Positions 1,660 to 30,727 of a DNA stretch of 64,000 nucleotides are shown here, piece by piece. The stretch is from Piromyces finnis finn. Taxonomy: Eukaryota; Fungi; Neocallimastigomycota. Position numbers and translations under genes: made by a program. Position 1 is the stretch's first letter. Each line of letters starts with the position of its first letter. Location of the stretch: the NCBI GenBank assembly GCA_002104945.1, contig MCFH01000025.1:310001-374000 (forward strand), read 5' to 3'. The notes beneath the pieces are model-generated. The model made no database searches, was not told the DNA's origin, and saw nothing but the letters and a program-made list of their open reading frames with translations.

Positions 1660-4600
1660 CTGCTGTTACCGTCAAGAATGGTGTTCCTTCATAAATGCCC
1701 AATCGAATCTGACGCTTACAAAGTTCTTTCCATTCCCTTGAATTGTAATTAATATTGTTAAAACTTCTTCCCCCAAGAAGGAATTTAAATATTTTACTGC
1801 ACACACTAGAATAATCATACACATTAGTATTCACCGGATTATTAGAACTATTACTATCATTAAGTAAATTACTATCTAAATTAGAATTATTATCTTCACT
1901 ATTGCTATCATTACTAATATTATTATTTCTATTACTACTATTGTTATTATTACTATTGTTATTAATTCTACTACTATTATTGTTATTAGTACTATTGTTA
2001 CTATTACTATTGTAATTATTATTACTACTATTGTTACTATTACTATTAATATTATTACTATCTTTACTGATATTAGCATTTTCATTATTATTGATAGGAC
2101 TATTGGAATTACGTTGACTGAAAAAATTTAATAGCTGGACTATGGAATCATAATGTTTAATACGGATATCTCTAAATGTTGGACAATCTAATAACCAATG
2201 TTTAATACTTTGATCTCCACACTTGCAACATGGACAGTAGTTAGGACAAACTGGATCAACAAATTTGGCAGCTTTGGCAACTCTAGCATCCAACTTGTAT
2301 CCGCTTCTTGCTTTCAATAGCCAGTAGAAGCCATAGGCAAACTCTGGGTACTCATAACATAATTTAATAAAATCTTTAGTTTCAATAAATTTATTATCAT
2401 CATAATATTGCGCTTTGATTGAATTCCCTTTGAGATCTTTCCAATAAAAGTTTTTAACTGCTTTAACATCTCCATGTTTCTTTAATTTTTTATCAAGTGT
2501 CCTACTTGATTTGCACCACGTGTATTTTCTAAATTTAGGAATGTAATTGACAAGGTGTGAGATAATACAATTTGAGTTTTTCCATTTGTTAAAACATCTA
2601 ACCTGAGCTAACGCACATTTGGCTGACAATGGAGGAATATTCAAATCTTTTGAAATAGAGTATAAAGATATAAACGATACAGCTTTATGAACTCCGGCAA
2701 CCCATCGTATTCCTTTGTTAACATGCTTCTGAGCAATCCTAGACCTAGCTTTGTTGGATCCAAGTAATGGTGCAAAGTATGAAACTCTGCTAATCACTTG
2801 TGAGTTAAGTACTAGTTTTTTGAAAGGAATAGGAATATTAGGATTTCTTAAGAATTTACTGACTGAGAAAAGCCCTTTCAAAACCTTGTTATTAAGAGCT
2901 TTAATTACTGGTTTAAGGGACAGATTCTTATCAAATGGAACACCAAGATAAGTATAACAATCAGTAGTTGGAATGGGTTGTCCTGCTAAGTAAAATGTTG
3001 GATCTCTCTTGTTCTGATTTTCTATTGATTCAGGACGAATCACCATCGTTGAACATTTCTGGATACCAAATTCCATTTCATTATACAATGCCCATTCATT
3101 AACTCTTCTAAGCATCTTTTTTAAGCATCCTCTTGTTGGAGCACAAATAACTATATCATCTGCAAAAAGTCCACCACAGCATCGAGTGTCACCTAAACTG
3201 ACTCCTAGATCTTCGCACTCTCTAAATATATCATTAATAAAGAGATTAAAGAGAATAGGAGAAAGAGGGCAACCTTGACGGACTCCTTTCTTTACATCAA
3301 AAGATTTCGAGAATTGTCCATCTAATTTGACATTAGCCTTAGATGTTAAATATAAATTTTTGATAAATTGTAAACTCTTACCTCGGATTCCTAAACAATC
3401 TAATTTATGGAGAATATTACCGATTGGGACTGAATCGTATGCTTTCCTGAGATCTAAAAAGGCCAAATATGTCTCTTTATTATCTAATTGACGTCTACGG
3501 CATATTTCTTGGATTGAAATGAAAAGACTAATACTTTCTTCCTTTTTTCGAAAACCAAATTGTTCAGGTCTAATGAAATTATTCTTTAAACCATATTCTG
3601 AGATTCTAGTGGTGACAATTTTGGAAATCAACTTAATGCCATTATTGATAAGTGATATACCTCGATAGTTATCACAATCTGTCAAATCACCCTTCTTAGG
3701 AATAGAAACAATACTGGATTCATTCCATGAGTTGGGGAAATCTCCATCCCAAATACGGTTGAATAATTTAAGAATAAAATTTAAACCATGAGCATCATTA
3801 TCTGAAGTAGTATTACCAGAAGAATTATTATCTGTAGCATTATTAGAATCATTACTTGATGGAACTAATGCTTTGTAAAATTCAATTGGAATACCATCCG
3901 GACCTGATGCTTTATAATTTGGAGTAGTGAGGATAGCTGACTTGACTTCATCAATACTAATATCTTGGTTGATATCCCACTCATCAAGCATAGGAAGTGA
4001 AAAACGTTTATTCGTTGGTTCTTCATACCAATGCTCCAAATCAAGACTTACACCACTTGGGTCTGATGCAAGATTTTCGAAATGATCATGCCACACATCT
4101 AGTAGTTCTTCCGTAGCAACAACTAATTCTCCATTTTTATTTTTAATTGGTTGAGCAATAAAGAAAGAATCTTTTCCAATTTTTGCAGTTTTCTTGATCC
4201 ATTTCCAGGCCTTCTTAGGATTATGACTCTTCATATACTCACATCCTGTTTTAATCCAATGAAGATATTCTTGCTTCCTAAATTCATTACATCTTTTGTG
4301 GATGTAATCAATGAGTTTACGGTAGATTTTAATTCTTTTAATAAATTCATCTATATCATAAATTCTTTCTTTTTTAAATCTCTTATACAACTTCATTTTG
4401 ATTTTTTGAAGATTAAAAATTTGTTGTGAAATATGAAATGAAGACTTTATAACATTATTTGCTGAAGTAATACTGAGCTCGTCTGCAATTGAAAAAGCAG
4501 TTGAAGTAAACTCTTTGGAAAGTTCATCTGTAGAAACATTAGGATCGCTGGATTTTGCTGAAAGTATTTGGAATTTATTATGACTGAGAATAGATTCCTT

Positions 4601-6076
4601 TTCCTCAATACATTTTAATCTATTCCATTTCAGAATTTTCTTAGGAACATTAAAGTCATTAGAAAAATCTTCCATAGGAATAATTTTACCATTAATAAGA
4701 AGTGGCTTATGGTCTGATACAGGATAAAAATTATTTATAAATGATCCTGAGTGAACAAGATCTTTCATCTTCGAATTGATAAGAGCATGGTCAATGTCGG
4801 AAGATTGATCACCTCGAGTCCAAGAGATAGTAGACCCTCTAAGCGGAAGAATTTCCCAATCTCCTAATCCATTAGTTGATAACCAGTTGGATAATTTTAC
4901 TTTAGACATATTAAAATCACCAACAAGAATCGATGGATGGGATGAATGAGTTTGTAACCACAAGCGAACTTCTAACTTTGCATGATCAACATAGATGTTG
5001 TGATGACTATGAGGCATATAAACATTTCCAATCGAGCATTTGAATCTATTCCAGAGACTAAAAGTATAAATAGAAATAATATACTTTCCAGAGAAGTTTT
5101 CAAGTGAGGCTTGACATGAATTGTGAAAACCTAAATATAAACCTCTCATTCCCGGAACTGATTCGTCAGCTTTCTTGAAAAAGTGTCTATAGTTTCGCAA
5201 AGTAACACGACAAGGATAATCTGTATTCGATCCAGAACCATTACCAGTTTCTTGGAAACATAAGAATAATGGTTTGAAAATAGCTATGAAATAGCTAATA
5301 CTATCTCTCTTTTCGTGATTCCACCCATTGGTGTTCCAACTAAGACAAAAAGAAAAGTTATCAGGCTTGTTGGATGAGGAAGAATCGTTGCTATTATTAT
5401 TATTATTAAAGTCATCGTTATTAATGGATGATGCATCAGAGGAATAAGTAGAACTATTACTAGATGGCTGTGAAACTGAAGAACTATCAACTATTGAACT
5501 GTTATCAGAGTTGATAGAGCTATTAGAATTAATTGTTGAATGTTGAGATTGAAATTGTGTTTGCTGTAGATCTGGAATATTTTCATGATGGGAAACTTGT
5601 TGAAGATCCTGTTGAAGATCTTGTTGAAGATCGGATTGTTGATGAGATTGTTGAACTGATTGTTGAACTGATTGTTGAAATGATTGTTGAATAGAATGTT
5701 GATGTTTATTAGAAACTAAAATTTTACGTTTGAGAGTGGAAAAAGTGTATTTGTGATTCCTTCTACTACGAGCTGAAAAGGAAATTGAGGTAACTGAAAG
5801 TTTCTTCTTTAACATGTGTAAGATTTTAATACAATCTTTTGATGAACCATGAACCTTGACTAAGAAAAAGTGATCATTGAAAGTTTGAAAATATTTAACA
5901 CTAATAACTGAATTAAATTTATCTTCTAGAATAACCTCGAGTTTTTCCCATAGCATATTTACTGACCATGATCGAATACCACGGATAAAGAAGGAGCGAA
6001 TATCATCTAAGGGGATACCATAAGACCGGGTACCACGTCTGATATAATTCTTGTCTTTAATATAAAGGACTGACAT
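1538..6076 (-). CDS. LINE polyprotein: N-terminal extension, APE endonuclease, reverse transcriptase, C-terminal CCHC zinc knuckle
   Basis: APE motifs SWNTNG, FQET, VGDFN, DIDH, SDHKP. RT motifs KASGPDGIP, NYRGISL, QFGFR, FLDLRKAYDSV, GVRQGCPLSPILFN, LFADD, YTYLG. C-terminal CKCGDQSIKHWLLDC. Confidence 0.97.
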   Translation of the reverse strand: MSVLYIKDKNYIRRGTRSYGIPLDDIRSFFIRGIRSWSVNMLWEKLEVILEDKFNSVISVKYFQTFNDHFFLVKVHGSSKDCIKILHMLKKKLSVTSISFSARSRRNHKYTFSTLKRKILVSNKHQHSIQQSFQQSVQQSVQQSHQQSDLQQDLQQDLQQVSHHENIPDLQQTQFQSQHSTINSNSSINSDNSSIVDSSSVSQPSSNSSTYSSDASSINNDDFNNNNNSNDSSSSNKPDNFSFCLSWNTNGWNHEKRDSISYFIAIFKPLFLCFQETGNGSGSNTDYPCRVTLRNYRHFFKKADESVPGMRGLYLGFHNSCQASLENFSGKYIISIYTFSLWNRFKCSIGNVYMPHSHHNIYVDHAKLEVRLWLQTHSSHPSILVGDFNMSKVKLSNWLSTNGLGDWEILPLRGSTISWTRGDQSSDIDHALINSKMKDLVHSGSFINNFYPVSDHKPLLINGKIIPMEDFSNDFNVPKKILKWNRLKCIEEKESILSHNKFQILSAKSSDPNVSTDELSKEFTSTAFSIADELSITSANNVIKSSFHISQQIFNLQKIKMKLYKRFKKERIYDIDEFIKRIKIYRKLIDYIHKRCNEFRKQEYLHWIKTGCEYMKSHNPKKAWKWIKKTAKIGKDSFFIAQPIKNKNGELVVATEELLDVWHDHFENLASDPSGVSLDLEHWYEEPTNKRFSLPMLDEWDINQDISIDEVKSAILTTPNYKASGPDGIPIEFYKALVPSSNDSNNATDNNSSGNTTSDNDAHGLNFILKLFNRIWDGDFPNSWNESSIVSIPKKGDLTDCDNYRGISLINNGIKLISKIVTTRISEYGLKNNFIRPEQFGFRKKEESISLFISIQEICRRRQLDNKETYLAFLDLRKAYDSVPIGNILHKLDCLGIRGKSLQFIKNLYLTSKANVKLDGQFSKSFDVKKGVRQGCPLSPILFNLFINDIFRECEDLGVSLGDTRCCGGLFADDIVICAPTRGCLKKMLRRVNEWALYNEMEFGIQKCSTMVIRPESIENQNKRDPTFYLAGQPIPTTDCYTYLGVPFDKNLSLKPVIKALNNKVLKGLFSVSKFLRNPNIPIPFKKLVLNSQVISRVSYFAPLLGSNKARSRIAQKHVNKGIRWVAGVHKAVSFISLYSISKDLNIPPLSAKCALAQVRCFNKWKNSNCIISHLVNYIPKFRKYTWCKSSRTLDKKLKKHGDVKAVKNFYWKDLKGNSIKAQYYDDNKFIETKDFIKLCYEYPEFAYGFYWLLKARSGYKLDARVAKAAKFVDPVCPNYCPCCKCGDQSIKHWLLDCPTFRDIRIKHYDSIVQLLNFFSQRNSNSPINNNENANISKDSNNINSNSNNSSNNNYNSNSNNSTNNNNSSRINNNSNNNNSSNRNNNISNDSNSEDNNSNLDSNLLNDSNSSNNPVNTNVYDYSSVCSKIFKFLLGGRSFNNINYNSREWKELCKRQIRLGIYEGTPFLTVTAELLTKIMPFAIDQQWSIFKRFEVTSKSVKLLTKIMPFAID

Positions 6077-7112: not shown

Positions 7113-9110
7113 TTAAGCTTGTTCAACGTTTTCAAGGTACCATTGACCAAGGAATTCAAGAGACTTCTTTGGAATACGAGTACGTTCGTCATCGTTGTAG
7201 AAGTCAATGTAGGTCATACCGAAACGAGTTTCGTAACCGTTTTCCCATTCGAAATTATCAACTAAAGACCAGGCCATGTAACCACGGACATCAACACCAT
7301 CTTCGGCATAGGCAAGACGAAGGTTTTCAAGGTATTGAGCGTACCAGTCAATACGGTATTCATCGTTAATAATGGATCCTTCAATGTTGCTTTCATCTTC
7401 AATGATGGATTCATCGTAGGTGTCAGCGTATTCTGGTTGACCAATAGATTCGAAGTATTCCTTGGTAGCTAAATCGTTAGCACGGCTAACCTTGTAGTTT
7501 GGTTGGGCACAACCGTTTTCGGTAATGATAATACCGTTCTTAATTAAACCCTTGTAACGGTCAGCGAACCAGTTAAGACCAACACGGATAGTTGGACCGT
7601 ACTTGGTGTTCCAGGAAGAACCAGCTTGGGAACCAAGAGTTGGTGGAATGCAGGTCCATCCTTCACCACGACCACGGCAGTTATCATCCCACATATCTTG
7701 CTTGGAAGTTTCGAAGCTAGCTTCGTCATCAGTTGGTGGTTGGACGTAAGTACCATCTTCGTTCTTAACTTGTTCAGCCCAGTGAGCAGTGTAGGTGTTC
7801 CAACCTAAGAAGTCAGAAGATGATCCCTTTAAGAGCTTCTTTTCTTCTGGAGTGAAGACTGGCATATCCTTACCCATTCTTTGCTTGACGGAAGCTGGGT
7901 AATCACCAACCATTGGTGGGTCAGAGTACCAACCAATACGGAATTCAGCTGCTAAGTTGGCGTACTTCTTGTTGTTTTCTAATTCTTCTGGAGTGGTGTT
8001 AGCGTCTTGCCATGGGATTTGAGCTTCACCATCAATGGTAATACCAATAAGACCCTTTTGCTTCTTTTGGAACTTCTTACGGTAGACATTGACAGCCTTG
8101 GCGTGAGCAATAAGAATGTTGTGAGAACACCAGACATCTTCTAATCTTTGTGGAGCACGGTTAGCTGGAAGAACTTCAGCTCCCTTGTAGTATTGAGATG
8201 GACCAATTTCGTAGGAACAACCTCCTTCTAAATCAAGTCCAGTAGTGTCGTTTTGGAGCTTACGTGGAGCTTCACCAGTACATCTGTATGGAGCCTTACC
8301 TGGACCAAGACGGTAACCAGAAACACAGTTAACCCATGGTTCGTTAATGGTGATCCATCCCTTAACACGGTCACCGAAGGTTTCGAAACAGTATTCAGCA
8401 TACTTGGCGAAATCATCTTGGGAACGGTAATCTAACCAACCACCGTACTTTTCGTGAAGGGCGTATGGAAGATCCCAGTGGTAAAGAGTAGCAAGTGGAG
8501 TAATTTCGTTTTCAAGAAGAGTATCAATGACCATGTTGTAGTATTGGGTACCCTTTTCGTTAACGTTCCACTTACCATTAACCTTCTTGGCTTCACCATC
8601 TGGGAAAAGACGAGACCAAGAGATGGAGAAACGGTAGTGGTTAGCCTTCATGATCTTCATCATCTTAACATCTTCATCGAACTTGTGGTATGAATCACAA
8701 GCAACATTACCGTTGGTGGAATCTGGGTTGGTTCTGTCACCAGATTCAACGTTCTTTGGGTAAAGGTGGGTGAAGTGATCCCAAACAGATTCACCACGAC
8801 CATCTTCGTTCCAGGCACCTTCAACTTGGTAGGCAGCAGTAGCAGCACCCCACTTGAAGTCAGCTGGAAGCTTCTTCTTTGGAGTTTCTTCAGCAGATTC
8901 AAAACTAGAATCTTCAACATCATCAAGAGAACCGGTAACTTCAACAACTTCTTCGTCAGATGGAACGGCAACATCATCAGCACCAGCAACATCTTCGACT
9001 TCAGAGTTGAGAGCAACATCATCAGCAGCTGGAGCAGAAGTGTCCTTAACGATACACTTCTTAGCAGCAGTAACAGCTAATAAAGTAGTGAAAACAGAGA
9101 GAGTCTTCAT
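7113..9110 (-). CDS. bglA: Secreted glycoside hydrolase family 1 beta-glucosidase (anaerobic-fungal BglA/Cel1A type), intronless, no dockerin
   Basis: Signal peptide; FKWGAATAAYQVEG; acid/base TINEP; nucleophile ITENG; WSLVDNFEWENGY. Strong C-ending codon bias. Closely resembles Orpinomyces BglA from memory. Confidence 0.95.
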   Translation of the reverse strand: MKTLSVFTTLLAVTAAKKCIVKDTSAPAADDVALNSEVEDVAGADDVAVPSDEEVVEVTGSLDDVEDSSFESAEETPKKKLPADFKWGAATAAYQVEGAWNEDGRGESVWDHFTHLYPKNVESGDRTNPDSTNGNVACDSYHKFDEDVKMMKIMKANHYRFSISWSRLFPDGEAKKVNGKWNVNEKGTQYYNMVIDTLLENEITPLATLYHWDLPYALHEKYGGWLDYRSQDDFAKYAEYCFETFGDRVKGWITINEPWVNCVSGYRLGPGKAPYRCTGEAPRKLQNDTTGLDLEGGCSYEIGPSQYYKGAEVLPANRAPQRLEDVWCSHNILIAHAKAVNVYRKKFQKKQKGLIGITIDGEAQIPWQDANTTPEELENNKKYANLAAEFRIGWYSDPPMVGDYPASVKQRMGKDMPVFTPEEKKLLKGSSSDFLGWNTYTAHWAEQVKNEDGTYVQPPTDDEASFETSKQDMWDDNCRGRGEGWTCIPPTLGSQAGSSWNTKYGPTIRVGLNWFADRYKGLIKNGIIITENGCAQPNYKVSRANDLATKEYFESIGQPEYADTYDESIIEDESNIEGSIINDEYRIDWYAQYLENLRLAYAEDGVDVRGYMAWSLVDNFEWENGYETRFGMTYIDFYNDDERTRIPKKSLEFLGQWYLENVEQA

Positions 9111-11992
9111 TTTTATTTATTTCTTAATTTAATTCTATTTTTTTTTTATTTTTTTTTTTATATTTTTTACCAAATTTTTGGTTTAATATTAAAATTTAGA
9201 AAAAATATTGTTATTTATAGTGTTTTTGAGAATTATAAAATTATATTAAAATTGTTTTATATTGATTTTAATATATATAACAAATATATTAAATATAACG
9301 GGAAACAAGTGAAATAAATCAAGAATATTAATTCTATAATATAATAATAAATTAAATTGTACTATGAAAAAAGAAATAAATGATATATTGTGCAACCTAT
9401 AAAATTCTAAAATTTTTTTCTTTAAGCATATATTGATATAAAATAAATAGAATTAAAACAATATATTAAACTTTATTCGTATTAAATTTCAAACTTTATT
9501 TATTATATTAATTAATATTATACTTTTAAAAGATAATACAGTCATTAAAATTTTATTCTATATTGTAAAAAATAAATGATAATAAACCGAAAATTGAATA
9601 ATAATAGTAATAAGTAATGATTAATGATAGTTCAATGAAATTTTGATATGAATATTATGCAAACTTTATTTTTCTATTAAATTATTTTCTTTTACTTTAC
9701 TTTATTTTACTTTATTATTAGGTTAATACAAAACTATATTTATATTTATTATTGTTTTTTTTTTTTTAAATAAATAATTTTTTATTAGGAGAATAATAAT
9801 AATTTATTATAAAAAAGAAATAAAAAGAAATAGAATCTGAAACTTTATTAATTATATTTATGAATTAAATATTATAAATTAAAAAAGAAAATTATAAAAA
9901 CTACAATTTAATTTAAATAAATAATAAAAATTTATAGTTTAAGATTGCAAAATAATAAATACCTTCAAAAACCTATGAAAGAAAAAATATCACTTAATTA
10001 ATTAGTATCATAAGAAATATTGAACATTAAATATACTTAGAATTTTAAAATAAAAATAATTTAAAAGTAATAATAATTTGTATAAGTATTAAATATAAAA
10101 ACAAATTTTAAATTTTAAAAAATAGCTTTAACTTTTAATTATATTATTTTTTTAAAATGATTATCAAAAACTTTTTATTAATCATATATTAAAATTCTAA
10201 ATAACTTTTCATATATTATTATTAAATATAATATACTCATTTCAAATAAATAAATAGATAATATATTTATAACAAATTTAACTATAAAATGAACAATATA
10301 TTGGAAATAAATACTCTATGTTTTAAATAAATTAAATAATAATTAAAAATAATATAATTCTTTTAAAATATGGAATTAAATTCCTAATACCACTTCACTG
10401 CTATAAAACCCAAATTCTTCTTTTTTATATACCACTAGAAACATAATATCGTAAAATATAAAATTTTTGGGTATTTAAATTAATAATAAATCATTCAGAA
10501 TGAATAAATTAATCATTTATTTACTACATTATTATAATGCATGCCAAAATAAAGTTTGTTTTTGTTTTGTTTTGTTTTGTTTTATAAATATCATAAATAT
10601 AATAAAAAGAATAAACCAAAAATGTTAAATTTTACTTTTTACATTGAAAATTCAATTTTTCTATAATTTTTCTATAATTGAATGAATGATAATTTGATAG
10701 TCTTTTTTTTTTTTAAATATTAAAATCCTGTAAATTCATCTATCATAACAAATATAATAATAAAAATTACAATAAAATCTACTTATTAAATTTGTCAGTA
10801 GTATGAACACTAAAAAAAATATATATTTTTAACATATTAAATGAAAACTTGTTCAAATAATAGTTTTTTCTTCTTTTTGTTTAATAGTTGTAGTGGTGGA
10901 CCAAAAAACATTATTAGCATGAATAATTATTATAAGTTTAAAAGTCACAAAAATTTGACTCCAATTAATTTATTTAAAAGTGTATTACAAATTTTAAATA
11001 TAAATTAAAATAAAATTTGTCGATATTTATGTAATACAAATTAAATTTGTTTTTACTGTTTTAATATATTATAAAAATGGACTAGAATGAATAATCGGCA
11101 ATCCCTTTGAGTGGAAAAGAATAAAAATAAAACTTTATTCTTTTTTTCTTTTCTTCATAAAATGATTAAAATAAAAATGTTTATTTTATAATAATAAATT
11201 AGAACTGGAATATCTTTTTCAAAAAAAAAAAACTTTTAAACAATTTAAAATTTATAAACCTTTAAATAATAATAAAGTTTAATATTATGAAACAATAATT
11301 AATTAATTTAAAATTACAATTTTATATTTTATATGGTTTATAATGAAATTAAATTTATAAAATAAATATGGAAAATTTTCTATATTATATAATTATCATA
11401 TATTAACAATATAGTTGTTTTATGTTACAATAAAAAATTTAAAGTTAAATAGATACTACTTTATTAGTAATATTATGTATAATATATAATATTACAATAT
11501 AATAAATTATATACAATGTTTTAGTATATTTTAGTATATTTTAATATATTTTAATATATTTTAATATACTATATAATTATTCAAATATAATTTATAATTC
11601 ATATATAAATATTCTATAAAACAAAATTGAAACAATTATTATTTTAAAGTTGTTATTTTCACCATTTATGATTGTTTCATTTTTTTTAAAAATTTTAATA
11701 ATGATTTTAACCAATAAAAATAATGTAAAATTTTATTATTTAACAAAATTATATAAAAAAAGTTTCAAACGAATTGGATATCTTTTTATGGTGGTATTAT
11801 AAAAGAAATACACTAACGAAGATGACTGAAATGTAAAGGAATAATATGTAATGAGTATTTCTGTTAAGGTCCATTAAAACAAGAAAAATGGTTATATTAA
11901 AAATATATATATTCTTTTTCTTATAAATAATAATAAAAATACTGACTTTTTTTTTAATAAGGATTAAAATGCTATAATTAATACATGACTTT

Positions 11993-11997
11993 GTAAT
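11993..11997. repeat. Target-site duplication GTAAT (left copy)
   Basis: The same 5-mer flanks the other end at 17207-17211. Confidence 0.9.
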
Positions 11998-12214
11998 TAT
12001 TAAGAGTTGTTTAATTTAGGTTTATAATTATGTCAACTTTATTAATATATTTTATGATAAAGAACTACTTGCGTTACATTCTTCTAAAACTACATGTATT
12101 TATACATTTACATTGTGGCTTAAACATATAATCAAATACAATATATACAAATACGTTTTAATACATTTCAATACATTTGAATACATGTGACATAACGTTT
12201 TACATATTCTAACA
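11998..12214 (-). repeat. 3' LTR (217 bp)
   Basis: Matches 16990-17206 except at 12004 (g/a) and 12169 (c/t). Sense strand reads TGTTAG...TTAATA. Confidence 0.95.
12038..12043 (-). terminator. Putative AATAAA polyadenylation signal in the 3' LTR
   Basis: AATAAA on the element sense strand, downstream of the LTR TATA-like box. The motif is weak evidence in AT-rich DNA. Confidence 0.4.
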
Positions 12215-12226
12215 TTCCCCCTCAAA
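12215..12226 (-). other. Polypurine tract (TTTGAGGGGGAA) abutting the 3' LTR
   Basis: Typical Copia-type GAGGGGGAA immediately before the TGTT start of the LTR. Confidence 0.92.
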
Positions 12227-12585
12227 CCTAATTTTCTACTAAGTAAAATTTGGTTTGCTGGTGAATATGTGCATTTTATTATTTCTAAACTATTAACTAT
12301 AAACTAAATCTAATGTTTAAAATTTTTATATTTCATTAATTGGAATTTAAAATATTTCACATATATTATTCGCTAATTGCTTTAAAGAATTTAAATATTA
12401 CCCTATAACTTCGTTTTTATGGATAAACTGAAAACCTTTGTATAATTGGGTAGTATTAAAGTTTAAAATTTGGATTGGATATTCATAAATTGTTATATCA
12501 TCCATTAAGGATTGAAAACCCTTCCGGTTTTACATTATCCTATAAACTATATTGGTAATCTCTCTGAGATTTACACAGAATTATA

Positions 12586-12741
12586 GACAACACATGGTTT
12601 ATCTCTTTGATTTTACGTCCTTATGACAACACATATGGATAACTCTTTTTGGTTTTACGTTCTCTTAACAACCTATGGTTAATCTTCTTGGTTTTACGTT
12701 CTTCGGACAACCTATGGATAACTCTGGTTTTATGTCCTTAT
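12586..12741. repeat. Four imperfect ~39-bp tandem repeats inside the LTR element
   Basis: Units start at 12586, 12625, 12667 and 12706; approximate consensus gacaacctatggataactcttttggttttacgtycttat. Confidence 0.85.
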
Positions 12742-13129
12742 AATTACAATTTTCTTTAGAATATTAGCATAATTGTATTTCAATCTATTTGTAAATACTA
12801 ATTAATAATGGTAAAATTTTAATTAAATTCTTAATAGTTATTTAGTTTATGTATATTGAATTTTAACATTTTCTTTTAGGTGTTTTTCCTTCCTTTTATG
12901 CCTTTTGTATTGATTAATTATTCTTATAATATTTAAGAATATTTTACTTTGTATTTGAAATTTTGTTCTTTTCATTTTTACATATTGAATCTTATAAATT
13001 TTTACAATTTGAATTTCAATTCATTCTATTTATTAAGCCTTAGTTTCTATGCAATGTTTTAGTTATTTCCAATGTTTAACTAGAAACAAAAATTATTATC
13101 TTGAATTTTAAATTTCGTATATTCACTAC

Positions 13130-13141
13130 TTCCCCCTCAAA
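13130..13141 (-). other. Second, internal copy of the polypurine tract
   Basis: ttccccctcaaa is identical to 12215-12226 (15/16 when extended), 915 bp away. Confidence 0.8.
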
Positions 13142-13824
13142 TCTAGATGTTTAGTAATAAATACTTAGATTTGAAAAAGAGAAATTTAAATTTCATAAAA
13201 TTTCATTCATTTTGCATCAAATTTTCATAATAATGAATAATTTTCCATAACATATACGATAAGTATTAATACCTATATAAATAATAAATAACATATTCTA
13301 ATGTTTTCATTCATTTTTCTCAATTGCTTATCCTTTAAAATATAGTGAAATAATATTTTCATGATAATATATTTTAATGTAGTGATAATCATAGAATATC
13401 AAACTAATGAATAAAATATTCCTCAATTATGTATTTCTTTACTTCAAATTAAAATAAGTAGATATACCAGTAAAATTATAACAAGTTAATATTGTAAGAT
13501 AATGACATTTAAAATATCGATTGTTGAAGAGAATAAAGTTCTTCTAAATTATATCGAAGTCGGCTCGGTTAATTAGAATGTCAGCTAATTGGTCGGCGAT
13601 CACTCACTACGTTGAAAGTGGCGATTTATATATGAGGTTACTAAATCACCGTAAATTATATTTTAAAACGGCGTCACAACATTCTTGAATGTTGGTAATA
13701 AATAAATATGATGAATCAATGTCATCTAAATCTAAGGAGCCCTTACTATGAAGGTGCTACATTGTTATTGATGGGACCAAATTAAATATATATAGGTCTA
13801 AAACCATCATTAATAATTATCTAT

Positions 13825-13950
13825 GAATATAACTCATTTCACGCTAAGTTAAATCATGATAAGTTGTTAAAATATTATTGAATATACCCATTTCACGCTA
13901 GGTTATTCAAAGTATATATATATGTAGAATATGCTCATTTCACGCTAAGC
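13825..13950. repeat. Three spaced copies of a GAATAT-n-CATTTCACGCTA motif
   Basis: Perfect CATTTCACGCTA at 13835, 13889 and 13936. Confidence 0.85.
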
Positions 13951-14631
13951 ATTTCTAACTTTAATAAATTACCTCATTTGAAATATTTGCTATGTATATT
14001 AGCAATAACAGCCTACGGGATGAGCATTTGACCAGTAATATATTTGCTTTATAGGTAGCAATAATTTAAATAATGCTTTTGAGGCTAAATATTATCTTAA
14101 AGTATTGTTATAATGATTTAATTCAAAGAATAGTATACTGGATTAAATTATATAATACTGATTTGAGTGAAATTATCATAAAGAAATTGATTGACATTTT
14201 CACAAGGATAGTTTCAATGTTCATTGCAATAGGATATTTTATATAAACTTATCAAATAATGTTTAATTATTCTAATTCATGTTTCTAATTGTATAAATTT
14301 TATGTATTTTCTTTATGTTCTATCTTTCCTCTATGGCGGAAAGAATATTTTCTCATTAAAATAGTAGTAGTTAAAGTATTTGAACATTTCACAAACAATT
14401 TATTTACTTGAAATAAATATGTATGCTTTCAATAACAATAATGCTATTTTATGAATGTTAATAAAACTAATTCTTTTAAAATAAAATGAATGTTTGTAGG
14501 TGTATGTATGTTTATGAATATTTACATAATTGAATATATGGATTTTTAAATGATAATGAATGTAAATTGACATAATGAGTAAATCAAAATCAAATTAATA
14601 AATTTAATAAATTGAGTAAATTAGGAGAATT

Positions 14632-16176
14632 CTAATATACAATGTTTATTTGCCAAAACATTACTGACATTAAAATAATAAATACATTTGCAAGAGAAAT
14701 ATATTTGAAGTTAACAGTTCCGTTTGAATTTAAATTTAAATCATCAATACTACTTAAGCCATTATTTGTAAGATAACTTGTATTTTCATTAAGATTATTA
14801 TCGATGTAATACTTTTTCATGTCGGTATTACAATAACAAGTATCGCATATATCAGTTTGATCATTTTTGTCAGTATCATTAGGAGTACTAGTTGATCTAA
14901 TGGAATTATCAGAAATACTAGTTGATCTAGTGGATCTAGTTGAAAGGTAGTTTGATTCAATTCTAAAAATTCTAACAGGATTTTTTTCATTTCCTCTGAA
15001 ACCCCAGTCATTGGATACCACTTTAAAAGTGGAGGCGCTAATTGTCACACCGTTTCCGGCAACAATACCCATGTGATGACCATCTGTAATAATGTCACCT
15101 GGCATACTATGTTTTATACCGTAATCGCCTTCTCCTATAAAATCAAAACCAGGAACATTCATTGAATACCAATCTTTGGTACATGGTGGTCGATCAAGTT
15201 TGCTTTTTGCAGCTAAAATGGGATGCTTAAATCCATTTAATTTATTTGGAGTTCCAACATCATAACCAGAAGCTAAAATAACTTCATAGACAAATAAATT
15301 GCATTTAAATTCGTCTGCATTGAAATATACATTGGCTTTTCTTTTTGCCTGTCTACTGTTACTAAATGCCCAAGCAGTTTCACCAATATTTGTAAAAGCA
15401 TTTAAATAAATTTTATTTTGTATAGAATTACTAGATTTCGAAACTGATTCATCTATGTAAATATATGATGGGATAGGAATATTTGAATTTTCATTGTTAT
15501 CAAATGAATCACGTAATTGTCGGTTATATGTAAAATTTAATGTATCTACTGATCTTCGGTTTAGCCAATTGTCTTTAAAAAGATAAGCGAGGGATATTTC
15601 ATCATCAAATTTATATGTAATTTTAAAAGATTTCCCACTTCCAACACAAACTTCAGGTAACTTTTCCTCAACGAAATTGTACCAAAAACCTTTTTGGTTA
15701 TTCCATTCAAAATCCCAAATGTCATAACCCGAAAAATGTATTTTCACTGTGTTCCAACCTATTACAGGAATAAAATTATAATCAATATCGACACTATAGC
15801 TTCCTAATGTTAAACACCAAATACCTCGTCTTGATCCTTGTGCAGCACTTATTGTTTCTTTATTTATAATTTTATCTATCGATATTTTATTTTTAATTGT
15901 TTGAGAAAGTTCAACTAGCATATTTTTATAAGAATCAGCATTTTTCATTTCTTCTATTAATCGCGGGGAGGCGGGTACCGTATTTCCTGAATTACCTCTA
16001 TAGTGAGAAATAGCATCTCTCAAGCTTGATATAGATTTGTGTGTCGATGGTGTTACAAATCCGCAGATATTATGTATCTTTTCGAAAATTGATTCTTTAT
16101 CGAATATAACTAAACTTCTGACTTTATACAATAAGAGAAAAAAAAATAATAACTTAAGAATTAATCTATTCTTCAT
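14632..16176 (-). CDS. 514-aa secreted, probably GPI-anchored protein: colicin M-like domain plus NlpC/P60/CHAP-like amidase domain (LTR cargo)
   Basis: Intact intronless ORF. Hydrophobic signal (aa 1-21). AISHYRGNSG, LGSYSV, DIWDFEWNNQKG and SGKSFKI parallel colicin M motifs. KCNLFV...PGDIITDGHHMGIV...NDWGFR gives a Cys/His dyad. S/T linker and hydrophobic C-terminus. The ORF is certain; the domain calls are by eye. Confidence 0.7.
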   Translation of the reverse strand: MKNRLILKLLFFFLLLYKVRSLVIFDKESIFEKIHNICGFVTPSTHKSISSLRDAISHYRGNSGNTVPASPRLIEEMKNADSYKNMLVELSQTIKNKISIDKIINKETISAAQGSRRGIWCLTLGSYSVDIDYNFIPVIGWNTVKIHFSGYDIWDFEWNNQKGFWYNFVEEKLPEVCVGSGKSFKITYKFDDEISLAYLFKDNWLNRRSVDTLNFTYNRQLRDSFDNNENSNIPIPSYIYIDESVSKSSNSIQNKIYLNAFTNIGETAWAFSNSRQAKRKANVYFNADEFKCNLFVYEVILASGYDVGTPNKLNGFKHPILAAKSKLDRPPCTKDWYSMNVPGFDFIGEGDYGIKHSMPGDIITDGHHMGIVAGNGVTISASTFKVVSNDWGFRGNEKNPVRIFRIESNYLSTRSTRSTSISDNSIRSTSTPNDTDKNDQTDICDTCYCNTDMKKYYIDNNLNENTSYLTNNGLSSIDDLNLNSNGTVNFKYISLANVFIILMSVMFWQINIVY

Positions 16177-16975
16177 TTTAAAGAAGAGGTAAAAATATAG
16201 GAAGTTACAATAAACAATTGTTAAAGAATGAAAAATATTTTTATTTCAATTTTCTGAATATTAATAAGATTTATAAATGTTACTATTTAAAAGGATTTTG
16301 AAATTATATTACTTAATTGTAAGCAATTATACAAAATAAAATTTTGGATTTTATTAGCTAATTTATACTATTTGTGGTGAATAAAGTAAGTTGAGAATGA
16401 AATTCTATTGTTTATTTAATTCTAAATTTATATTTCGAATTTGTACTTTATTAACTTTGAATTTAATTTTACAATATCTATTCATAAATAGTTTCTAAAA
16501 TAATTAATTCTTTTCAATTTTGAATACTTTAATTTATTTCTGAGTTTTAGGCGTTGGTTGTATTTGAATAAAATAAATTTTATGTTGGTTCAAAATTATT
16601 TAGAGTTCAATTTGTTTTGTTTATTTTTAAATTTAAAGATTTAAATTAAAAGTTAAAAAATTCAAAATTCAATTTTAGAATAATTTGCTTTCGGAATTTA
16701 AAATTGTCTATATTATTTTAGTATAAGGAAACTTTGTTTATATCAGGTAATGTTTTTCTATTTTAGATTGCCATTTCAATTTCAAAAGTTTGAAATCTCA
16801 AATTCTAGATCTCAAAACAATTTTACCAAACATAGATAATTTCAGATTAAATAATTTAATTCTGATAGTTAGAATTTCCTACAGTTTTCTCCTATGACAA
16901 AATGTCATATCCGGCGGTTTGATTCATCTTTCAGAGAATCATTTGAGAATTAATGAGATTCTCTCTTGAGAGTCT

Positions 16976-16989
16976 TGAGACTCTTAATC
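16976..16989 (-). other. Primer-binding site complementary to the anticodon arm of tRNA-Lys(CUU) (half-tRNA type)
   Basis: Plus strand TGAGACTCTTAATC directly abuts the 5' LTR. GACTCTTAATC is the conserved tRNA-Lys(CUU) anticodon arm core (recalled). Confidence 0.75.
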
Positions 16990-17206
16990 TATTAAAAGTT
17001 GTTTAATTTAGGTTTATAATTATGTCAACTTTATTAATATATTTTATGATAAAGAACTACTTGCGTTACATTCTTCTAAAACTACATGTATTTATACATT
17101 TACATTGTGGCTTAAACATATAATCAAATACAATATATACAAATACGTTTTAATACATTTTAATACATTTGAATACATGTGACATAACGTTTTACATATT
17201 CTAACA
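16990..17206 (-). repeat. 5' LTR (217 bp)
   Basis: 215/217 identical to 11998-12214; contains four 10-bp subrepeats (atacattt-like). Confidence 0.95.
17089..17096 (-). promoter_or_regulatory. Putative TATA box (TATAAATA) in the 5' LTR
   Basis: Mid-LTR position upstream of AATAAA, consistent with U3-R-U5 order. Low specificity in AT-rich DNA. Confidence 0.4.
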
Positions 17207-17211: not shown

Positions 17212-20029
17212 ATTAAAATAACTATAAAAACTATTTAATAAAAAAGTGTGTTTATAAATATTTAATAAATAAAAATATTTAATAACTAATAATAATATAT
17301 GAAATTTCAATAATACTTTTTTTTCCAAAATTTTTTATGTTAGTAATATATATAAAATAAATAATAATGTACATCTTCTTAAAGGTGTTGAAATAGCAAT
17401 TTTTATAATTATCATGGATATAAAGTATAATAAAAATTATTAACTTTTTTTTCATTATTCAAAGATTTATAATTATAAACTCTTAAAAATTATTATTACT
17501 GATAATTAATATAGTTTTACATTTGAGTTAAAAAAAAAAGTATTTTTATTATTATCATTATTTATTTATTTATTTTGTTTTTGTTTTTGTTTAATTATTA
17601 GTATTAAATAGGAAAAGTAAATATGGTTACACTTTTAAATTTCAATATGTTAATTCTATTTTACTAATAAATAATGTAATGATTATTAATATGTTCTTGT
17701 ATTACACATTTAAAAAGTTAAATCTTGCATTATCTATTATTTATTGACAAAAAATTAATAAACATTGTTAAATACCTCAGAATTGTTATTAGAAAAGATT
17801 TTTTAAAGATACTTAATTTATATAATTTATATATAATTTATTCTCTTTCAACTTTTAAGATCAAAACACTTTTCTTACGAGCTAAATTGATTTCCAAATA
17901 TACTCATTACTAACTTTTAAATATATTTTAAAAATATTAAAAGTTTAAAATTATTTACATTTTTTATTTATTAAAATAATAATAATTAATAAATAAAAAA
18001 ATAAAGTATTATCCAACTATTTTATGTTTTTGAATAATTTAAAAAAAAATAATAATAATAATAATATTTATGGATACCATTCAATATTAAACTTTTTATT
18101 GACCTTTTTTTTTAAAAAAAAATATAAAAATTTATAATATTATAAACTCTTTGAAAGTTATTCTTTGATTTTGATAAAAAAAAAAGAAATTTATCAACAT
18201 TTATTCTTTAATTTCTGAATAATAATAATATAATGATTATAGAATTATTGCAACTGTTTATCTTTTTTTTTAATTTTGTTTTTATTTTTAAATATCCAAA
18301 ATAATTATGTTAATAAAGATTTCTATTTTATTGTATAAACTAATGACTTATTTTGATTATATGAAAATTTTAAATCCAATATTTTATTATAATTTTTTTA
18401 ATAAGAACAAAATAAAATAATTATAATATATTAATAAATATATATATATAAAAAAAAAAAAGAAAGAAAAAAAGAAACTATCTAGTTTAATAAAACAGAG
18501 AATTACTTACTACTAACGATATTGTATATTAAACCCTTTAAATCTTAAAATTTCCTTAATACAGATTATCAATTATATGTCAAACATATTTTAAAAGAAT
18601 TTGAAATAATATATTTGGATATAAATAAATTTTTATTAGAGTGGAATTTAAAAATTCTCATTTTAACAATGTGTTAGTAATTTATATATAATTATAATTA
18701 TTTGATTTTTATTATTCTTTTATTCAATAATGTTAAATGTTAAAAAAAAAAAAAAAAAAGAGCATCATGACAATATTATATTTTATATATATATAAAATA
18801 AAAATTTTTTACATATGACTTAAATGATAATAGGGAATTGTAGGTTGCAATATTTTAAAGTTCATTTAGTCATTGATAATGAAAATTTATATTTCTTTTT
18901 TATTTTTATATATTATTAGATTTTATTATATACTCTCTTAAATATTTTTATTGATTAATTAGATATTATAAAAAAATTTTTTAATACAATCATTTAATCT
19001 AACCTAGTATTACAAAAATAATAAAGGATTAGATTATAATAAATATTAAATATCACTATTCATAATTATTTTATAATACAAACCTGAATAGCAATCATTG
19101 TTTTTTTTAATATTTTGGTGTTTTACATTTTCTTTTATCAATACTTTCAACACTACATGTAGTTAAAATTGATTTTAATTCCGTTATTAATTTTTATTTA
19201 ATAATTTTTCATTGTAATTATCAAAAAAATACATTCTATATCAATCCATTTATCATCAATTTCATCTTTACACTAAAGTACCAAAAAATTATACTCTTCT
19301 AAAGAACAAAGAACAAGTATAATTGGAAGCTTTGATCATTAAAAGAATATAATTAGTTGTAAAAATATATTATTAGCATATATTTCTATATATTTCTATG
19401 ATGAATCCACATAAAATCAATAATATATTATAAAAACATAATAGCATTAATTTTCCCATTTTAAAAGAAAATTTTATAGAATAATATTAGTGTTTAAGTG
19501 TTTATGTGTTTATGCTTATATTTAATCCTCTCTCTCTATATATATATTATTAAATATTAATAAAACTTTAATTATAAAGTTTTTTATTTATTTATTTATT
19601 TTATTTTATTTTTTTTTGTGTGTATTATTCAATTTATTACATTAAAAAAATATTAATTCTTTTTAATGCCTTTTTTTTTTTATTAATATTATTATATATA
19701 ATTTAAAGTCTAGTGTTTTTTTATTGTAATATAATTTTTATATTTTTTTAAATATTAAAAGTTAGTAGGACAATTTTTTCTTTCTTTTGAAATTATTATC
19801 AGAATAATAAGATAATATTTTTTTTTTTAAAAAAAATATATAAATATATAAAATCAAATTATATTTATTTTTATTTTTATTTTTATTTTACAATCTTATT
19901 TTTTGGAGAAAAATTTTATTAAAAAATAAAATGTTAATCGTTTTATGAAATCTAAATTAATGAGGATAGTGTAAATAATTTATATGAATATATTTTAAAA
20001 TTTAGAAAATATATAAAAGCTATTAAGCA

Positions 20030-30727
<10,698 letters not shown>

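What the first reader, a model, noticed from the sequence alone, without database searches (positions are those of the whole stretch)
15592..16017. Colicin M-like (lipid II-cleaving) domain in a fungal secreted protein
Residues ~54-195 show four colinear motifs that parallel the colicin M catalytic domain as I recall it: AISHYRGNSG vs ALAHYLWGNG; LGSYSV vs LGNITL; D-I-W-D-F-E-W-N-N-Q-K-G vs D-K-Y-D-F-N-A-S-T-H-R-G (identical spacing); SGKSFKI...DEI vs SGKEYQI...GEI. The two acidic residues (D152, D155) are kept, while Y->W, H->Q and R->K are substituted, so activity or specificity may differ. ColM-family toxins hydrolyse the peptidoglycan precursor lipid II. A eukaryotic, transposon-borne version would be notable.
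Basis: partly seen in the sequence, partly recalled or inferred. Interest (0 to 1): 0.9.

Follow-up and report, generated by a model that had tools for sequence, protein, structure and literature searches.

The report
Colicin-M-fold antibacterial toxin in gut fungus
A rumen-type anaerobic fungus carries an intact, probably bacterial-derived gene between two retrotransposon-type repeats; its secreted protein joins a colicin M-fold toxin domain, previously described only in bacteria, to a peptidoglycan-cutting domain, and looks like a weapon against bacterial cell walls.

Summary
Window 14632-16176 (-) is one uninterrupted 514-aa ORF, and aa 54-195 carry the four motifs, which match the real colicin M (ColM) sequence. 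No Pfam, NCBIfam or PDB sequence search finds ColM.

The AlphaFold model of aa 30-206 (pLDDT 91.7) matches only the ColM family:
- Foldseek's top 15 PDB hits are ColM, pectocins, syringacin M, PaeM and the Bacteroides T6SS effector BtpeA.
- An exhaustive structural search of 48,161 chains puts the five ColM-type representatives first (Z 5.6-7.0).
- A profile-profile comparison aligns the motifs colinearly (P 0.001).

The domain defines an unnamed family of at least 87 sequence clusters. Bacterial members are C-terminal tips of RHS toxins, each followed by a small lipoprotein ORF. A separate clade holds anaerobic gut eukaryotes (Piromyces finnis, Tritrichomonas musculus).

The ColM positions D226, Y228, D229 and E241 have conserved counterparts (D152, W154, D155, E171). 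The essential H235 and R236 have none, so lipid II cleavage is plausible but unproven.

The C-terminal half has an NlpC/P60 fold. All four copies in the genome lie between LTR pairs, and a sister unit carries a lysozyme in the same slot.

Verdict: a new eukaryotic branch of the ColM fold, probably an antibacterial cell-envelope toxin.

The parts
14632..16176 (-). Complete 514-aa ORF without introns: signal peptide, ColM-fold domain, NlpC/P60-like domain, Ser/Thr-rich linker, CDTCYC motif and a hydrophobic C-terminal tail.
   Evidence: ORF listing. Run X1 holds a 1701-nt contig over 14662-16362 with 0 mismatches and no joint; similar contigs occur in 4 runs from 3 studies.
16114..16176 (-). Predicted signal peptide, aa 1-21 (MKNRLILKLLFFFLLLYKVRS).
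   Evidence: Read from the sequence: a basic n-region, a hydrophobic core and a small residue before L22. No predictor was run.
15577..16044 (-). Colicin M-fold domain, aa ~45-200.
   Evidence: AF2 model of aa 30-206, pLDDT 91.7. Foldseek, VIA-align and atlas matches to the ColM family. hhalign P 0.0011.
15985..16017 (-). Motif 1, DAISHYRGNSG (aa 54-64), equivalent to ColM A132..H135-Y136..G141. In the family A55 is invariant, H58 is in 40/48 and R60 in 36/48.
15790..15810 (-). Motif 2, TLGSYSV (aa 123-129), equivalent to ColM Y195-L196-G197-N-I-T-L. G125 is invariant and L124 is in 44/48.
15709..15723 (-). Motif 3, D152-I-W154-D155-F156, equivalent to ColM D226-K-Y228-D229-F230, the putative metal-binding/catalytic acidic pair. 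Family counts of 48: D152 35, W154 44, D155 41, F156 46.
   Evidence: The roles of the ColM residues come from PMC8469651.
15655..15678 (-). N167-F-V-E-E171-K-L-P174. N167 (43/48) and E171 (45/48) are the most conserved polar residues; E171 aligns with ColM E241.
15613..15642 (-). Motif 4, GSGKSFKITY (aa 179-188), equivalent to ColM S-G-K-E-Y-Q-I.
14941..15429 (-). NlpC/P60-like papain-fold domain, aa ~250-412, with candidate catalytic C292 (KCNLFVYE) and H368 (GDIITDGHHMGIV).
   Evidence: AF2 model, pLDDT 82.9. The Foldseek list is dominated by RipA, CwlO, MepS, LytE, Trichomonas NlpC and Tse1. Alignment A5.
14635..14730 (-). C-terminal anchor signal (NSNGTVNFKYISLANVFIILMSVMFWQINIVY), either a GPI-type signal or a tail anchor. 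The last 98 nt recur at 94-98% identity at 8 or more other loci.
   Evidence: The same tail is found in P0003 and P0007.
16979..17206 (-). Upstream (5') LTR of the unit that carries the gene. It begins TGTTAG on the minus strand.
   Evidence: The genome holds at least 136 candidate copies.
11987..12214 (-). Downstream (3') LTR, 97% identical to the 5' LTR.
12215..12228 (-). Polypurine-tract-like GGTTTGAGGGGGAA immediately upstream of the 3' LTR, read on the minus strand.

Best explanation
The gene encodes a secreted, probably surface-tethered, two-headed antibacterial protein of an anaerobic gut fungus (Piromyces finnis or a near relative).

N-terminal head (aa ~45-200). It is a divergent homologue of the colicin M catalytic domain and belongs to a so far unnamed family. 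In bacteria this family forms the C-terminal toxic tip of RHS polymorphic toxins, each paired with a lipoprotein-type candidate immunity ORF. Its most likely action is on the periplasmic or outer face of the bacterial cytoplasmic membrane, on an undecaprenyl-pyrophosphate-linked cell-wall precursor such as lipid II. The conserved acidic pair D152/D155, the aromatic W154, and N167/E171 would do the chemistry.

C-terminal head (aa ~250-412). It is an NlpC/P60-type cysteine peptidase (C292/H368) that would cut peptidoglycan stem peptides. Cutting the wall would also open access to the membrane.

The fungus needs no immunity protein, because it has neither peptidoglycan nor undecaprenyl carriers.

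The gene was probably acquired from bacteria. In this genome it is copied and reshuffled as the cargo of a non-autonomous LTR element family.

Shown here: the fold, homology at family level, the domain layout, the LTR context, the RHS context and an intact ORF.
Inferred: secretion, anchoring, the substrate, antibacterial use and the direction of transfer.
For: Fold
- AF2 model, pLDDT 91.7.
- The Foldseek top 15 PDB hits are all ColM-type or BtpeA, E from 1.7e-4 to 6e-2.
- VIA-align gives Z 5.3-8.2 over 136-155 aligned residues, against 3.9 for the next entry.
- An exhaustive search puts the five ColM-type representatives at ranks 1-5 of 48,161 chains.
- The ESM Atlas structure search gives TM 0.61 over 156 residues to a cluster that is 100% PF14859, and TM 0.59-0.64 to RHS/YD-shell tips, DUF3289, TssD-DUF3289, Mu-F and eCIS toxins.
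- The nearest cluster by language-model features is 'Colicin M domain-containing'.

Sequence
- hhalign P 0.0011 with colinear motifs.
- D152, W154, D155, N167 and E171 are conserved in both clades of the family.

Toxin context
- Four bacterial members carry RHS repeats.
- P0064 and P0125 are each followed by a small ORF that overlaps by 8 nt and starts with a lipoprotein-type signal peptide.
- DUF3289, another ColM-fold family, is an experimentally confirmed periplasm-acting T6SS toxin (PMC11148199 and PMC12135965).

Module logic
- Paralogous P. finnis genes with the same leader, cysteine-rich region and tail carry either this domain (P0003, L005-L007) or a phage-type lysozyme, PF00959 (P0007, L018), in the same slot.
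- The window copy adds an NlpC/P60-fold domain.

Self-immunity
- ColM does not cleave alpha-saturated, dolichol-type carriers (PMC8469651).

Genuinely fungal
- The gene is 30% GC in a 21% GC window.
- There are four copies on large scaffolds, all between LTR pairs.
Against: - The Pfam Colicin_M and DUF3289 HMMs and all plain sequence searches miss the domain.
- Z scores of 5.6-8.2 and TM of 0.4-0.6 are moderate.
- H235 and R236 of ColM, each needed for more than 98% of its activity, have no conserved counterpart. ColM-type domains with degenerate motifs (PmnH, HxYDx5FK) are thought to be inactive.
- D152 is D in only 35 of 48 family members, yet even D226E or D226N kills ColM.
- No enzymology exists for any member of this family.
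- A tethered protein of about 50 kDa must still reach the bacterial membrane through the wall or the outer membrane.
- The runs that hold the transcript-like contigs are only guessed to be RNA.
- dN/dS among the three recent paralogues is 0.4-0.76 on few changes, which is not informative.
Confidence: 0.6

Rival explanations
1. The fold and ancestry are those of ColM, but the chemistry or substrate differs. The domain might cleave another polyprenyl-(pyro)phosphate-linked glycan, such as teichoic-acid, capsule or O-antigen carriers. It might cut a different bond, using residues of its own such as H58, R60, N167 and E171 in place of ColM's His-Arg.
For: H235 and R236 are not conserved, whereas H58, R60, N167 and E171 are. 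The family is as distant from ColM as DUF3289 and BtpeA are. Even within ColM bacteriocins the catalytic mechanism is unresolved.
Against: The D-x-aromatic-D-F core and the downstream Glu, which form the metal-binding centre of ColM-type enzymes, are kept. The lipoprotein-type candidate immunity ORFs point to the same compartment as for ColM.
Confidence: 0.25
2. The domain has lost catalysis. It would serve as a lipid II or cell-wall binding (targeting) module for the NlpC/P60 head, or act by sequestering its ligand.
For: The ColM signature is degenerate. Hybrid bacteriocins with degenerate ColM motifs appear to rely on their second toxic domain. The window protein does carry a second, enzymatic head.
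Against: In P0003 and L005-L007 the domain is the only effector-type module, and it sits where a lysozyme sits in the paralogues. In bacteria it is the sole toxic tip of RHS proteins that have candidate immunity ORFs. Polar residues are conserved across both clades.
Confidence: 0.1
3. The match is a chance or convergent structural resemblance, or the gene is a decaying passenger of a transposon with no present function.
For: Z scores are below 8. No HMM hits. Expression is not proven. The gene lies inside a repeat unit.
Against: All ColM-type PDB representatives, and only those, head an exhaustive search of 48,161 chains. The colinear profile match has P 0.001. The language-model nearest neighbour independently carries PF14859. 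All four paralogous ORFs are intact. At least 87 clusters of homologues share conserved motifs.
Confidence: 0.05

Closest known systems
Colicin M and ColM-type bacteriocins (Pfam PF14859: ColM, PaeM, syringacin M, pectocins M1/M2)
   Same: They share the catalytic-domain fold. They also share colinear motifs: A..HY...G, LG, D-x-[YW]-D-F, a downstream Glu, and GK-x-[YF]-x-I. Both are antibacterial toxins. The bacterial relatives of the window domain have candidate immunity proteins exposed to the periplasm, as ColM has Cmi.
   Different: Sequence identity is about 12%, and the Pfam HMM gives no match. The His-Arg of DxYD(x5)HR is absent. There is no TonB box and no receptor-binding domain; delivery is by a eukaryotic signal peptide, or by RHS in the bacterial members. 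The window protein is fused to an NlpC/P60 domain and a C-terminal anchor. It is encoded in a fungus inside an LTR unit.
DUF3289 (PF11692) T6SS effectors
   Same: This is another divergent ColM-fold family used as a polymorphic-toxin module that acts in the periplasm. Its similarity to the model (TM 0.64) equals that of ColM itself.
   Different: The DUF3289 HMM does not hit the fungal genome or the family. DUF3289 is bacterial only, is delivered by T6SS, and has DUF943 or small membrane proteins as immunity.
BtpeA C-terminal domain (PDB 9jdi), a Bacteroides fragilis GA3 T6SS effector co-secreted with BtaeB
   Same: It is a structural neighbour (Z 6.2 over 155 residues) and a toxin from gut anaerobes. 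According to the title of its paper, it is deployed together with a second, synergistic effector. The window protein likewise carries two heads in one chain.
   Different: No sequence similarity is detectable. The BtpeA paper (Li et al. 2025, Cell Host Microbe 33:1901) is not in the library, so its activity could not be checked here.
NlpC/P60 peptidoglycan hydrolases acquired by Trichomonas vaginalis (PDB 6biq, 6bim)
   Same: They are a precedent for an anaerobic eukaryote using bacterial-type cell-wall hydrolases. The C-terminal domain of the window protein shares this fold, and Tritrichomonas musculus carries a homologue of the ColM-fold domain.
   Different: Those proteins have no ColM-fold domain, and no link to a transposon has been reported for them.

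Membership tests
Colicin M family (Pfam PF14859) | Match to the Colicin_M profile HMM at or above the gathering score | tested here: not met
   There is no hit at E <= 10 for the protein, none at E <= 1 for the 48 family members, and none in the whole fungal genome in six frames.
Colicin M family (Pfam PF14859) | Fold of the ColM catalytic domain | tested here: met
   The Foldseek top 15 hits are ColM-type or BtpeA. VIA-align Z is 5.3-8.2 over 136-155 residues. ColM-type chains take ranks 1-5 of 48,161. TM to a cluster that is 100% PF14859 is 0.61.
Colicin M family (Pfam PF14859) | Signature DxYD(x5)HR with essential D226, Y228, D229, H235 and R236 | tested here: not met
   The protein has D152-x-W154-D155, so Asp, aromatic and Asp are kept. 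The positions that align with H235 and R236 are variable (Q161/K162 when ungapped, W/Y in the hhalign alignment). The signature definition is from PMC8469651 and PMC5821083.
Colicin M family (Pfam PF14859) | Bacteriocin architecture: N-terminal TonB box plus a receptor-binding domain before the catalytic domain | tested here: not met
   The N-terminus is a signal peptide followed directly by the domain. Bacterial relatives use RHS shells.
Colicin M family (Pfam PF14859) | [quoted passage not shown] | not testable with these tools
   This needs enzymology.
ColM-fold toxin superfamily (ColM, DUF3289, BtpeA-CTD, the 'novel Colicin M-like' toxins of PMC12419801) | Shared fold, detectable profile-profile similarity, and use as a toxin module in polymorphic toxin systems with a periplasmic immunity protein | tested here: met
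   Fold. hhalign P 0.0011. RHS fusions. Downstream ORFs with lipoprotein-type signal peptides. Binding of toxin to the candidate immunity protein was not shown.
DUF3289 (PF11692) | Match to the DUF3289 HMM | tested here: not met
   There is no match in the genome, while the E. coli control does match. None of the 48 family members matches.
NlpC/P60 superfamily (C-terminal domain) | Papain-like fold with a catalytic Cys at a helix start and a His on a beta-strand | tested here: met
   The Foldseek list is almost entirely NlpC/P60 enzymes. C292 and H368 are conserved in 5 of 6 homologues. No Pfam NlpC_P60 or CHAP hit was found, so this is a divergent member.
Non-autonomous LTR retroelement | Two near-identical LTRs in direct orientation, a TG start, a polypurine tract before the 3' LTR, many copies, and no gag-pol inside | tested here: met
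   Two 228-nt LTRs, 97% identical. TGTTAG start and GAGGGGGAA tract. At least 136 candidate LTR copies. The only ORF of 150 aa or more inside the unit is the toxin gene. The target-site duplication and primer-binding site were not verified.

The most novel reading that the evidence does not exclude
A lipid II-degrading, ColM-fold enzyme family has crossed from bacteria into at least two lineages of anaerobic gut eukaryotes, Neocallimastigomycota fungi and parabasalid protists, and serves there as a surface-displayed weapon against bacteria. In Piromyces, a non-autonomous LTR element acts as a mobile cassette carrier. It copies and swaps antibacterial heads (lysozyme, ColM-fold, ColM-fold plus NlpC/P60) behind a common leader and in front of a common anchor. 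This would be a eukaryotic counterpart of bacterial polymorphic toxin systems.
Probability: 0.4. Interest if true: 0.85.

Novelty: new variant of a known kind. Interest (0 to 1): 0.72.

Why it matters
ColM-type enzymes are the only known protein toxins that destroy lipid II, a validated antibiotic target. Until recently they were thought to be confined to a few proteobacterial bacteriocins. Full-text searches found no paper that links colicin M with Neocallimastigomycota or Tritrichomonas.

If the fungal domain is active, three things follow:
- It extends the enzyme family to eukaryotes.
- It offers a version that needs no TonB-dependent uptake and may act on Gram-positive rumen bacteria.
- It gives a concrete molecular handle on how anaerobic fungi hold their own against bacteria in the rumen.

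The LTR-borne cassette arrangement with exchangeable antibacterial heads would also be an unusual case of a retroelement spreading and diversifying a host-beneficial gene family. It may explain the GH24 lysozyme abundance reported for Piromyces (PMC8778642).

Tried and rejected
- Plain sequence searches found nothing. Pfam, NCBIfam and PADLOC on the whole protein gave no relevant hit. phmmer against PDB sequences gave none. The family profile against PDB sequences gave no ColM at E <= 10. Pfam on 48 members gave none.
- hhalign against a narrow, enterobacterial-only ColM alignment gave only E 0.053. It became P 0.0011 once Pseudomonas-type ColM domains were added.
- With the three-sequence alignment A6, the search for related loci found only two Victivallaceae MAG loci, both C-terminal fragments. 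A 401-genome sample of that phylum gave four fragmentary hits. No donor lineage can be named.
- Complex prediction of the RHS tip of P0064 with its downstream lipoprotein ORF returned no verdict. This is no evidence either way.
- Pfam found nothing for the two candidate immunity ORFs, and BLASTP between them gave only E 0.15.
- The paper describing BtpeA is not held in the library, so its activity could not be used.
- dN/dS among the three young paralogues (0.41-0.76) rests on too few changes to be informative.
- Bacterial contamination was rejected. The codon usage is AT-rich, the flanking LTRs are fungal, there are four copies on large scaffolds, and the leader and tail are of eukaryotic type.
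- A role in the fungus's own wall was rejected. The fungus has no peptidoglycan or undecaprenyl carrier, and ColM does not cut dolichol-type lipids.
Full report
**What is there.** Window 14632-16176 (minus strand) is a single uninterrupted ORF of 514 aa. The window is very AT-rich: 14-33% GC in 2-kb bins, with the gene at 30% GC. The best named relatives are hypothetical proteins of Piromyces finnis. The assembly is 56.46 Mb in 232 contigs. I therefore take it to be that fungus or a very near relative.

All four quoted motifs are present. I fetched the real colicin M gene from plasmid pAPEC-O1-ColBM (L003:899-1714:-).

The protein on record for this gene (P0001, 438 aa) starts at Met77. It lacks the signal peptide and the first motif. 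Homologues align across that N-terminal part, and the fold model places it with pLDDT 97-98. The 514-aa ORF is therefore the better gene model.

**Sequence searches alone do not find ColM.**
- Pfam, NCBIfam and PADLOC give nothing relevant for the protein, and phmmer against all PDB sequences gives nothing.
- The Pfam Colicin_M HMM does not hit the fungal genome in six frames.
- The DUF3289 HMM does not hit it either, although its E. coli control does.

**The domain defines a real family.** phmmer of aa 30-206 against 1.84 billion representatives found 87 proteins at E <= 1e-3 and 40 at E <= 1e-10. An alignment of 48 domains (A1) has this consensus: DAxxHYRSxxGGxVPAG ... TLGSY ... GxDxWDF ... 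NxxxExIP ... AGxGKPFxITY.

Counts of conserved residues among the 48 members:

| Residue | Count |
|---|---|
| A55 | 48 |
| G125 | 48 |
| F156 | 46 |
| E171 | 45 |
| W154 | 44 |
| N167 | 43 |
| D155 | 41 |
| H58 | 40 |
| R60 | 36 |
| D152 | 35 (plus 6 Asn, 3 Glu) |

**Fold.** AlphaFold2 with A1 gave a confident model (pLDDT 91.7, pTM 0.85).
- Foldseek against the PDB: the first 15 hits are all colicin M, syringacin M, pectocins M1/M2, PaeM or the C-terminal domain of the Bacteroides fragilis T6SS effector BtpeA. E runs from 1.7e-4 to 6e-2 and TM by query is 0.37-0.49. Nothing related follows.
- VIA-align re-scoring: Z 5.3-8.2 over 136-155 residues for these 12 entries, with the next entry at 3.9.
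- Exhaustive VIA-align of all 48,161 PDB cluster representatives: pectocin M1 (Z 7.0), BtpeA (6.2), ColM (6.0), syringacin M (5.9) and PaeM (5.6) take ranks 1-5. Rank 6 has Z 5.0 over only 67 residues.

The individual Z values are moderate. What carries weight is that every ColM-type representative, and only those, heads the list. The refutation condition 'a better match to an unrelated fold' is not met.

In the ESM Atlas, structural neighbours (TM 0.59-0.64) are a 'lipid II-degrading bacteriocin' cluster (100% PF14859, 156 residues aligned), DUF3289, TssD-DUF3289 fusions, RHS/YD-shell tips, Mu-F and eCIS proteins. The nearest cluster by language-model features is 'Colicin M domain-containing' (PF14859 in 47% of members, score 0.95).

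**Profile-profile test.** Against a narrow ColM alignment, hhalign found only the catalytic motif (E 0.053). I then collected 39 diverse ColM catalytic domains. With these the match rose to P = E = 0.0011 over 67 columns. It pairs TLGSY with YLGNITL, D152-x-W154-D155-F156 with D226-x-Y228-D229-F230, E171 with E241, and GKxFxI with GKxYxI. With a relaxed threshold the alignment extends colinearly to DAixHYRSxGG against AxaHYLWGNG.

**Catalytic residues.** In ColM the residues D226, Y228, D229, H235 and R236 are each needed for more than 98% of activity. D226 binds the divalent cation, and even D226E or D226N inactivates the enzyme. ColM-like domains with degenerate signatures (PmnH, HxYDx5FK) are thought to be inactive (PMC8469651; PMC5821083).

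The fungal domain keeps the Asp-x-aromatic-Asp-Phe core and the downstream Glu. Nothing conserved aligns with His-Arg: Q161 and K162 are variable positions. D152 itself is not invariant in the family.

The family has conserved polar residues of its own: H58, R60, N167 and E171, in both clades. I could not inspect the model coordinates, so whether these cluster around D152/D155 is unknown.

My reading is that homology to ColM is well supported, and that identical chemistry is plausible but unproven.

**What the relatives say about function.**
- Bacterial members are C-terminal tips of RHS/YD-shell proteins (P0064, P0079, P0086, P0088; P0048/P0125 are named 'RHS repeat-associated protein' by their source).
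- In two long contigs the toxin gene is followed by a small ORF (139 and 125 aa) that overlaps it by 8 nt. Each small ORF begins with a lipoprotein-type signal peptide. This is the classic layout of a toxin with a periplasm-facing immunity protein. It matches the compartment in which ColM and DUF3289 act.
- A 2025 survey also mentions an unnamed 'novel Colicin M-like' toxin domain with membrane-anchored periplasmic immunity proteins (PMC12419801). It may overlap the bacterial part of this family. It does not mention fungi or parabasalids.
- Single members are fused to LysM, a ricin-type lectin or lactococcin 972, and four are fused to chitin-binding modules.

**Eukaryotic members.**
- The genome has four copies of the domain.
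- Three of them (L005-L007, 432-434 aa) have this layout: signal peptide, cysteine-rich region, ColM-fold domain, acidic stretch, hydrophobic tail.
- Paralogues with the same leader and tail carry a phage-type lysozyme (PF00959) in exactly that slot (P0007 and L018).
- A metagenomic fungal-type protein (P0123, on a contig of 20.6% GC) has 14 six-cysteine repeats followed by two tandem ColM-fold domains.
- The cluster of P0025 contains KAK8843783.1 of Tritrichomonas musculus, a parabasalid gut protist.
- A maximum-likelihood tree splits the family at 100/99 support. One clade of 22 holds P. finnis, the chitin-binding fusions and the parabasalid group. The other clade of 26 holds the RHS tips.
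- Most rows of the tree are unlabelled metagenomic proteins. The number of transfers and the donor therefore remain open.

**The rest of the protein.** Aa ~250-412 were modelled at pLDDT 82.9. They match almost exclusively NlpC/P60 peptidoglycan endopeptidases: RipA, CwlO, MepS, LytE, Trichomonas NlpC and Tse1, with E from 5e-3. C292 and H368 are conserved in five of six homologues. After this domain come a Ser/Thr-rich linker, a CDTCYC motif, and a tail of small residues followed by 16 hydrophobic residues. That tail fits a GPI signal or a tail anchor (this is inference).

**Transposon context.**
- The gene lies between 228-nt direct repeats at 11987-12214 and 16979-17206, which are 97% identical.
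- Read on the gene's strand, each repeat starts TGTTAG. The 3' copy is preceded by GGTTTGAGGGGGAA, a polypurine-type tract.
- The LTR has at least 136 candidate copies in the genome. All four ColM-fold genes lie between LTR pairs 4.6-5.2 kb apart. A lysozyme paralogue lies about 0.7 kb from a copy of the same LTR, as the toxin genes do.
- Inside the window unit the toxin gene is the only ORF of 150 aa or more.
- The last 98 nt of the gene recur at 94-98% identity at eight or more loci.
- 'Transposon-borne' therefore holds, as a non-autonomous LTR unit. The target-site duplication and the primer-binding site were not verified.

**Expression.** Four runs from three studies of one organism hold contigs over the ORF. 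One is a 1701-nt contig over 14662-16362 with no mismatch and no joint. Total contig lengths of 20-45 Mb are smaller than the 56-Mb genome. All four runs have no coverage of the AT-rich spacer at 17388-17800. Both observations suggest transcriptomes, but the runs' kind is only guessed. I treat expression as likely, not shown.

**Mechanism proposed.** The protein is secreted through the ER and tethered at the fungal surface. When bacteria make contact, the NlpC/P60 head cuts peptide cross-links and the ColM-fold head destroys C55-PP-linked wall precursors. The fungus is intrinsically immune, because it has no peptidoglycan and because ColM does not cut alpha-saturated dolichol carriers.

My confidence in each step:

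| Claim | Confidence |
|---|---|
| ColM-fold homologue | ~0.9 |
| Antibacterial cell-envelope toxin | ~0.7 |
| Lipid II phosphoester cleavage specifically | ~0.4 |

**Novelty.** Divergent ColM-fold toxins in bacteria are recent knowledge: DUF3289 in 2024-25 and the BtpeA structure in 2025. A eukaryotic branch, its fusion to NlpC/P60 and an anchor, and its carriage on an LTR cassette family were not found in the literature searched.

I rate it a new variant of a known kind, of high but not extreme interest. This scan's first-stage notes had already flagged the LTR unit and the NlpC/P60 half on this same window.

Noticed in passing
G000 loci L005 (C192), L006 (C46), L007 (C157), L018 (C222); window 11987-17206: A family of LTR-bounded units of about 4.4-5.2 kb carries one secreted-protein gene each. 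The genes share the same leader, cysteine-rich region and C-terminal tail but have exchangeable middles: phage-type lysozyme, ColM-fold, or ColM-fold plus NlpC/P60. One unit examined (L017, C24) has no ORF of 150 aa or more.
   Followed up: partly
window 14632-14729: The last 98 nt of the gene, which encode the hydrophobic tail, recur at 94-98% identity at eight or more other loci of the genome. This suggests a shared 3' module among many surface-protein genes.
   Followed up: partly
P0158 (KAK8843783.1, Tritrichomonas musculus), cluster of P0025: A 184-aa parabasalid protein consists of the ColM-fold domain alone, without an obvious signal peptide. It groups with the fungal clade in the tree.
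   Followed up: partly
L019:179-2953 (P0123, metagenomic contig, 20.6% GC): A 924-aa fungal-type protein has a signal peptide, 14 tandem six-cysteine repeats (C..GG.C.NP..C.G....GLCPGG....CC) and two tandem ColM-fold domains. The function of the repeats is unknown; they may serve in targeting.
   Followed up: no
P0002 (282 aa, JGI metagenome): This homologue of the NlpC/P60-like domain has Asn in place of the candidate catalytic Cys and lacks the conserved His. It may be a non-catalytic version.
   Followed up: no
window 14729-16401, run X2: One contig of run X2, a slightly different strain, joins 14729 to 16401 and so skips 1671 nt that include almost the whole gene. It could come from a copy of the unit without the cargo, or it could be an assembly chimera at the shared repeats.
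   Followed up: no
window 1538-6076 (-) and 7113-9110 (-): The first is a 1512-aa ORF with a reverse transcriptase domain (RVT_1, E 8e-36), so another retroelement. The second is a 665-aa glycoside hydrolase family 1 gene.
   Followed up: no
window 22731-26468 (+) and 26627-30727 (+): These two very long ORFs (1245 and 1366 aa) have no Pfam match. They lie in a stretch with strong GC and AT skew; the GC skew reaches 0.39.
   Followed up: no
L008, L009, L010-L014 (Victivallaceae and related MAGs): The reference bacterial genomes searched hold only short C-terminal fragments of the domain (ORFs of 58-112 aa). They look like orphan or displaced toxin tips.
   Followed up: partly
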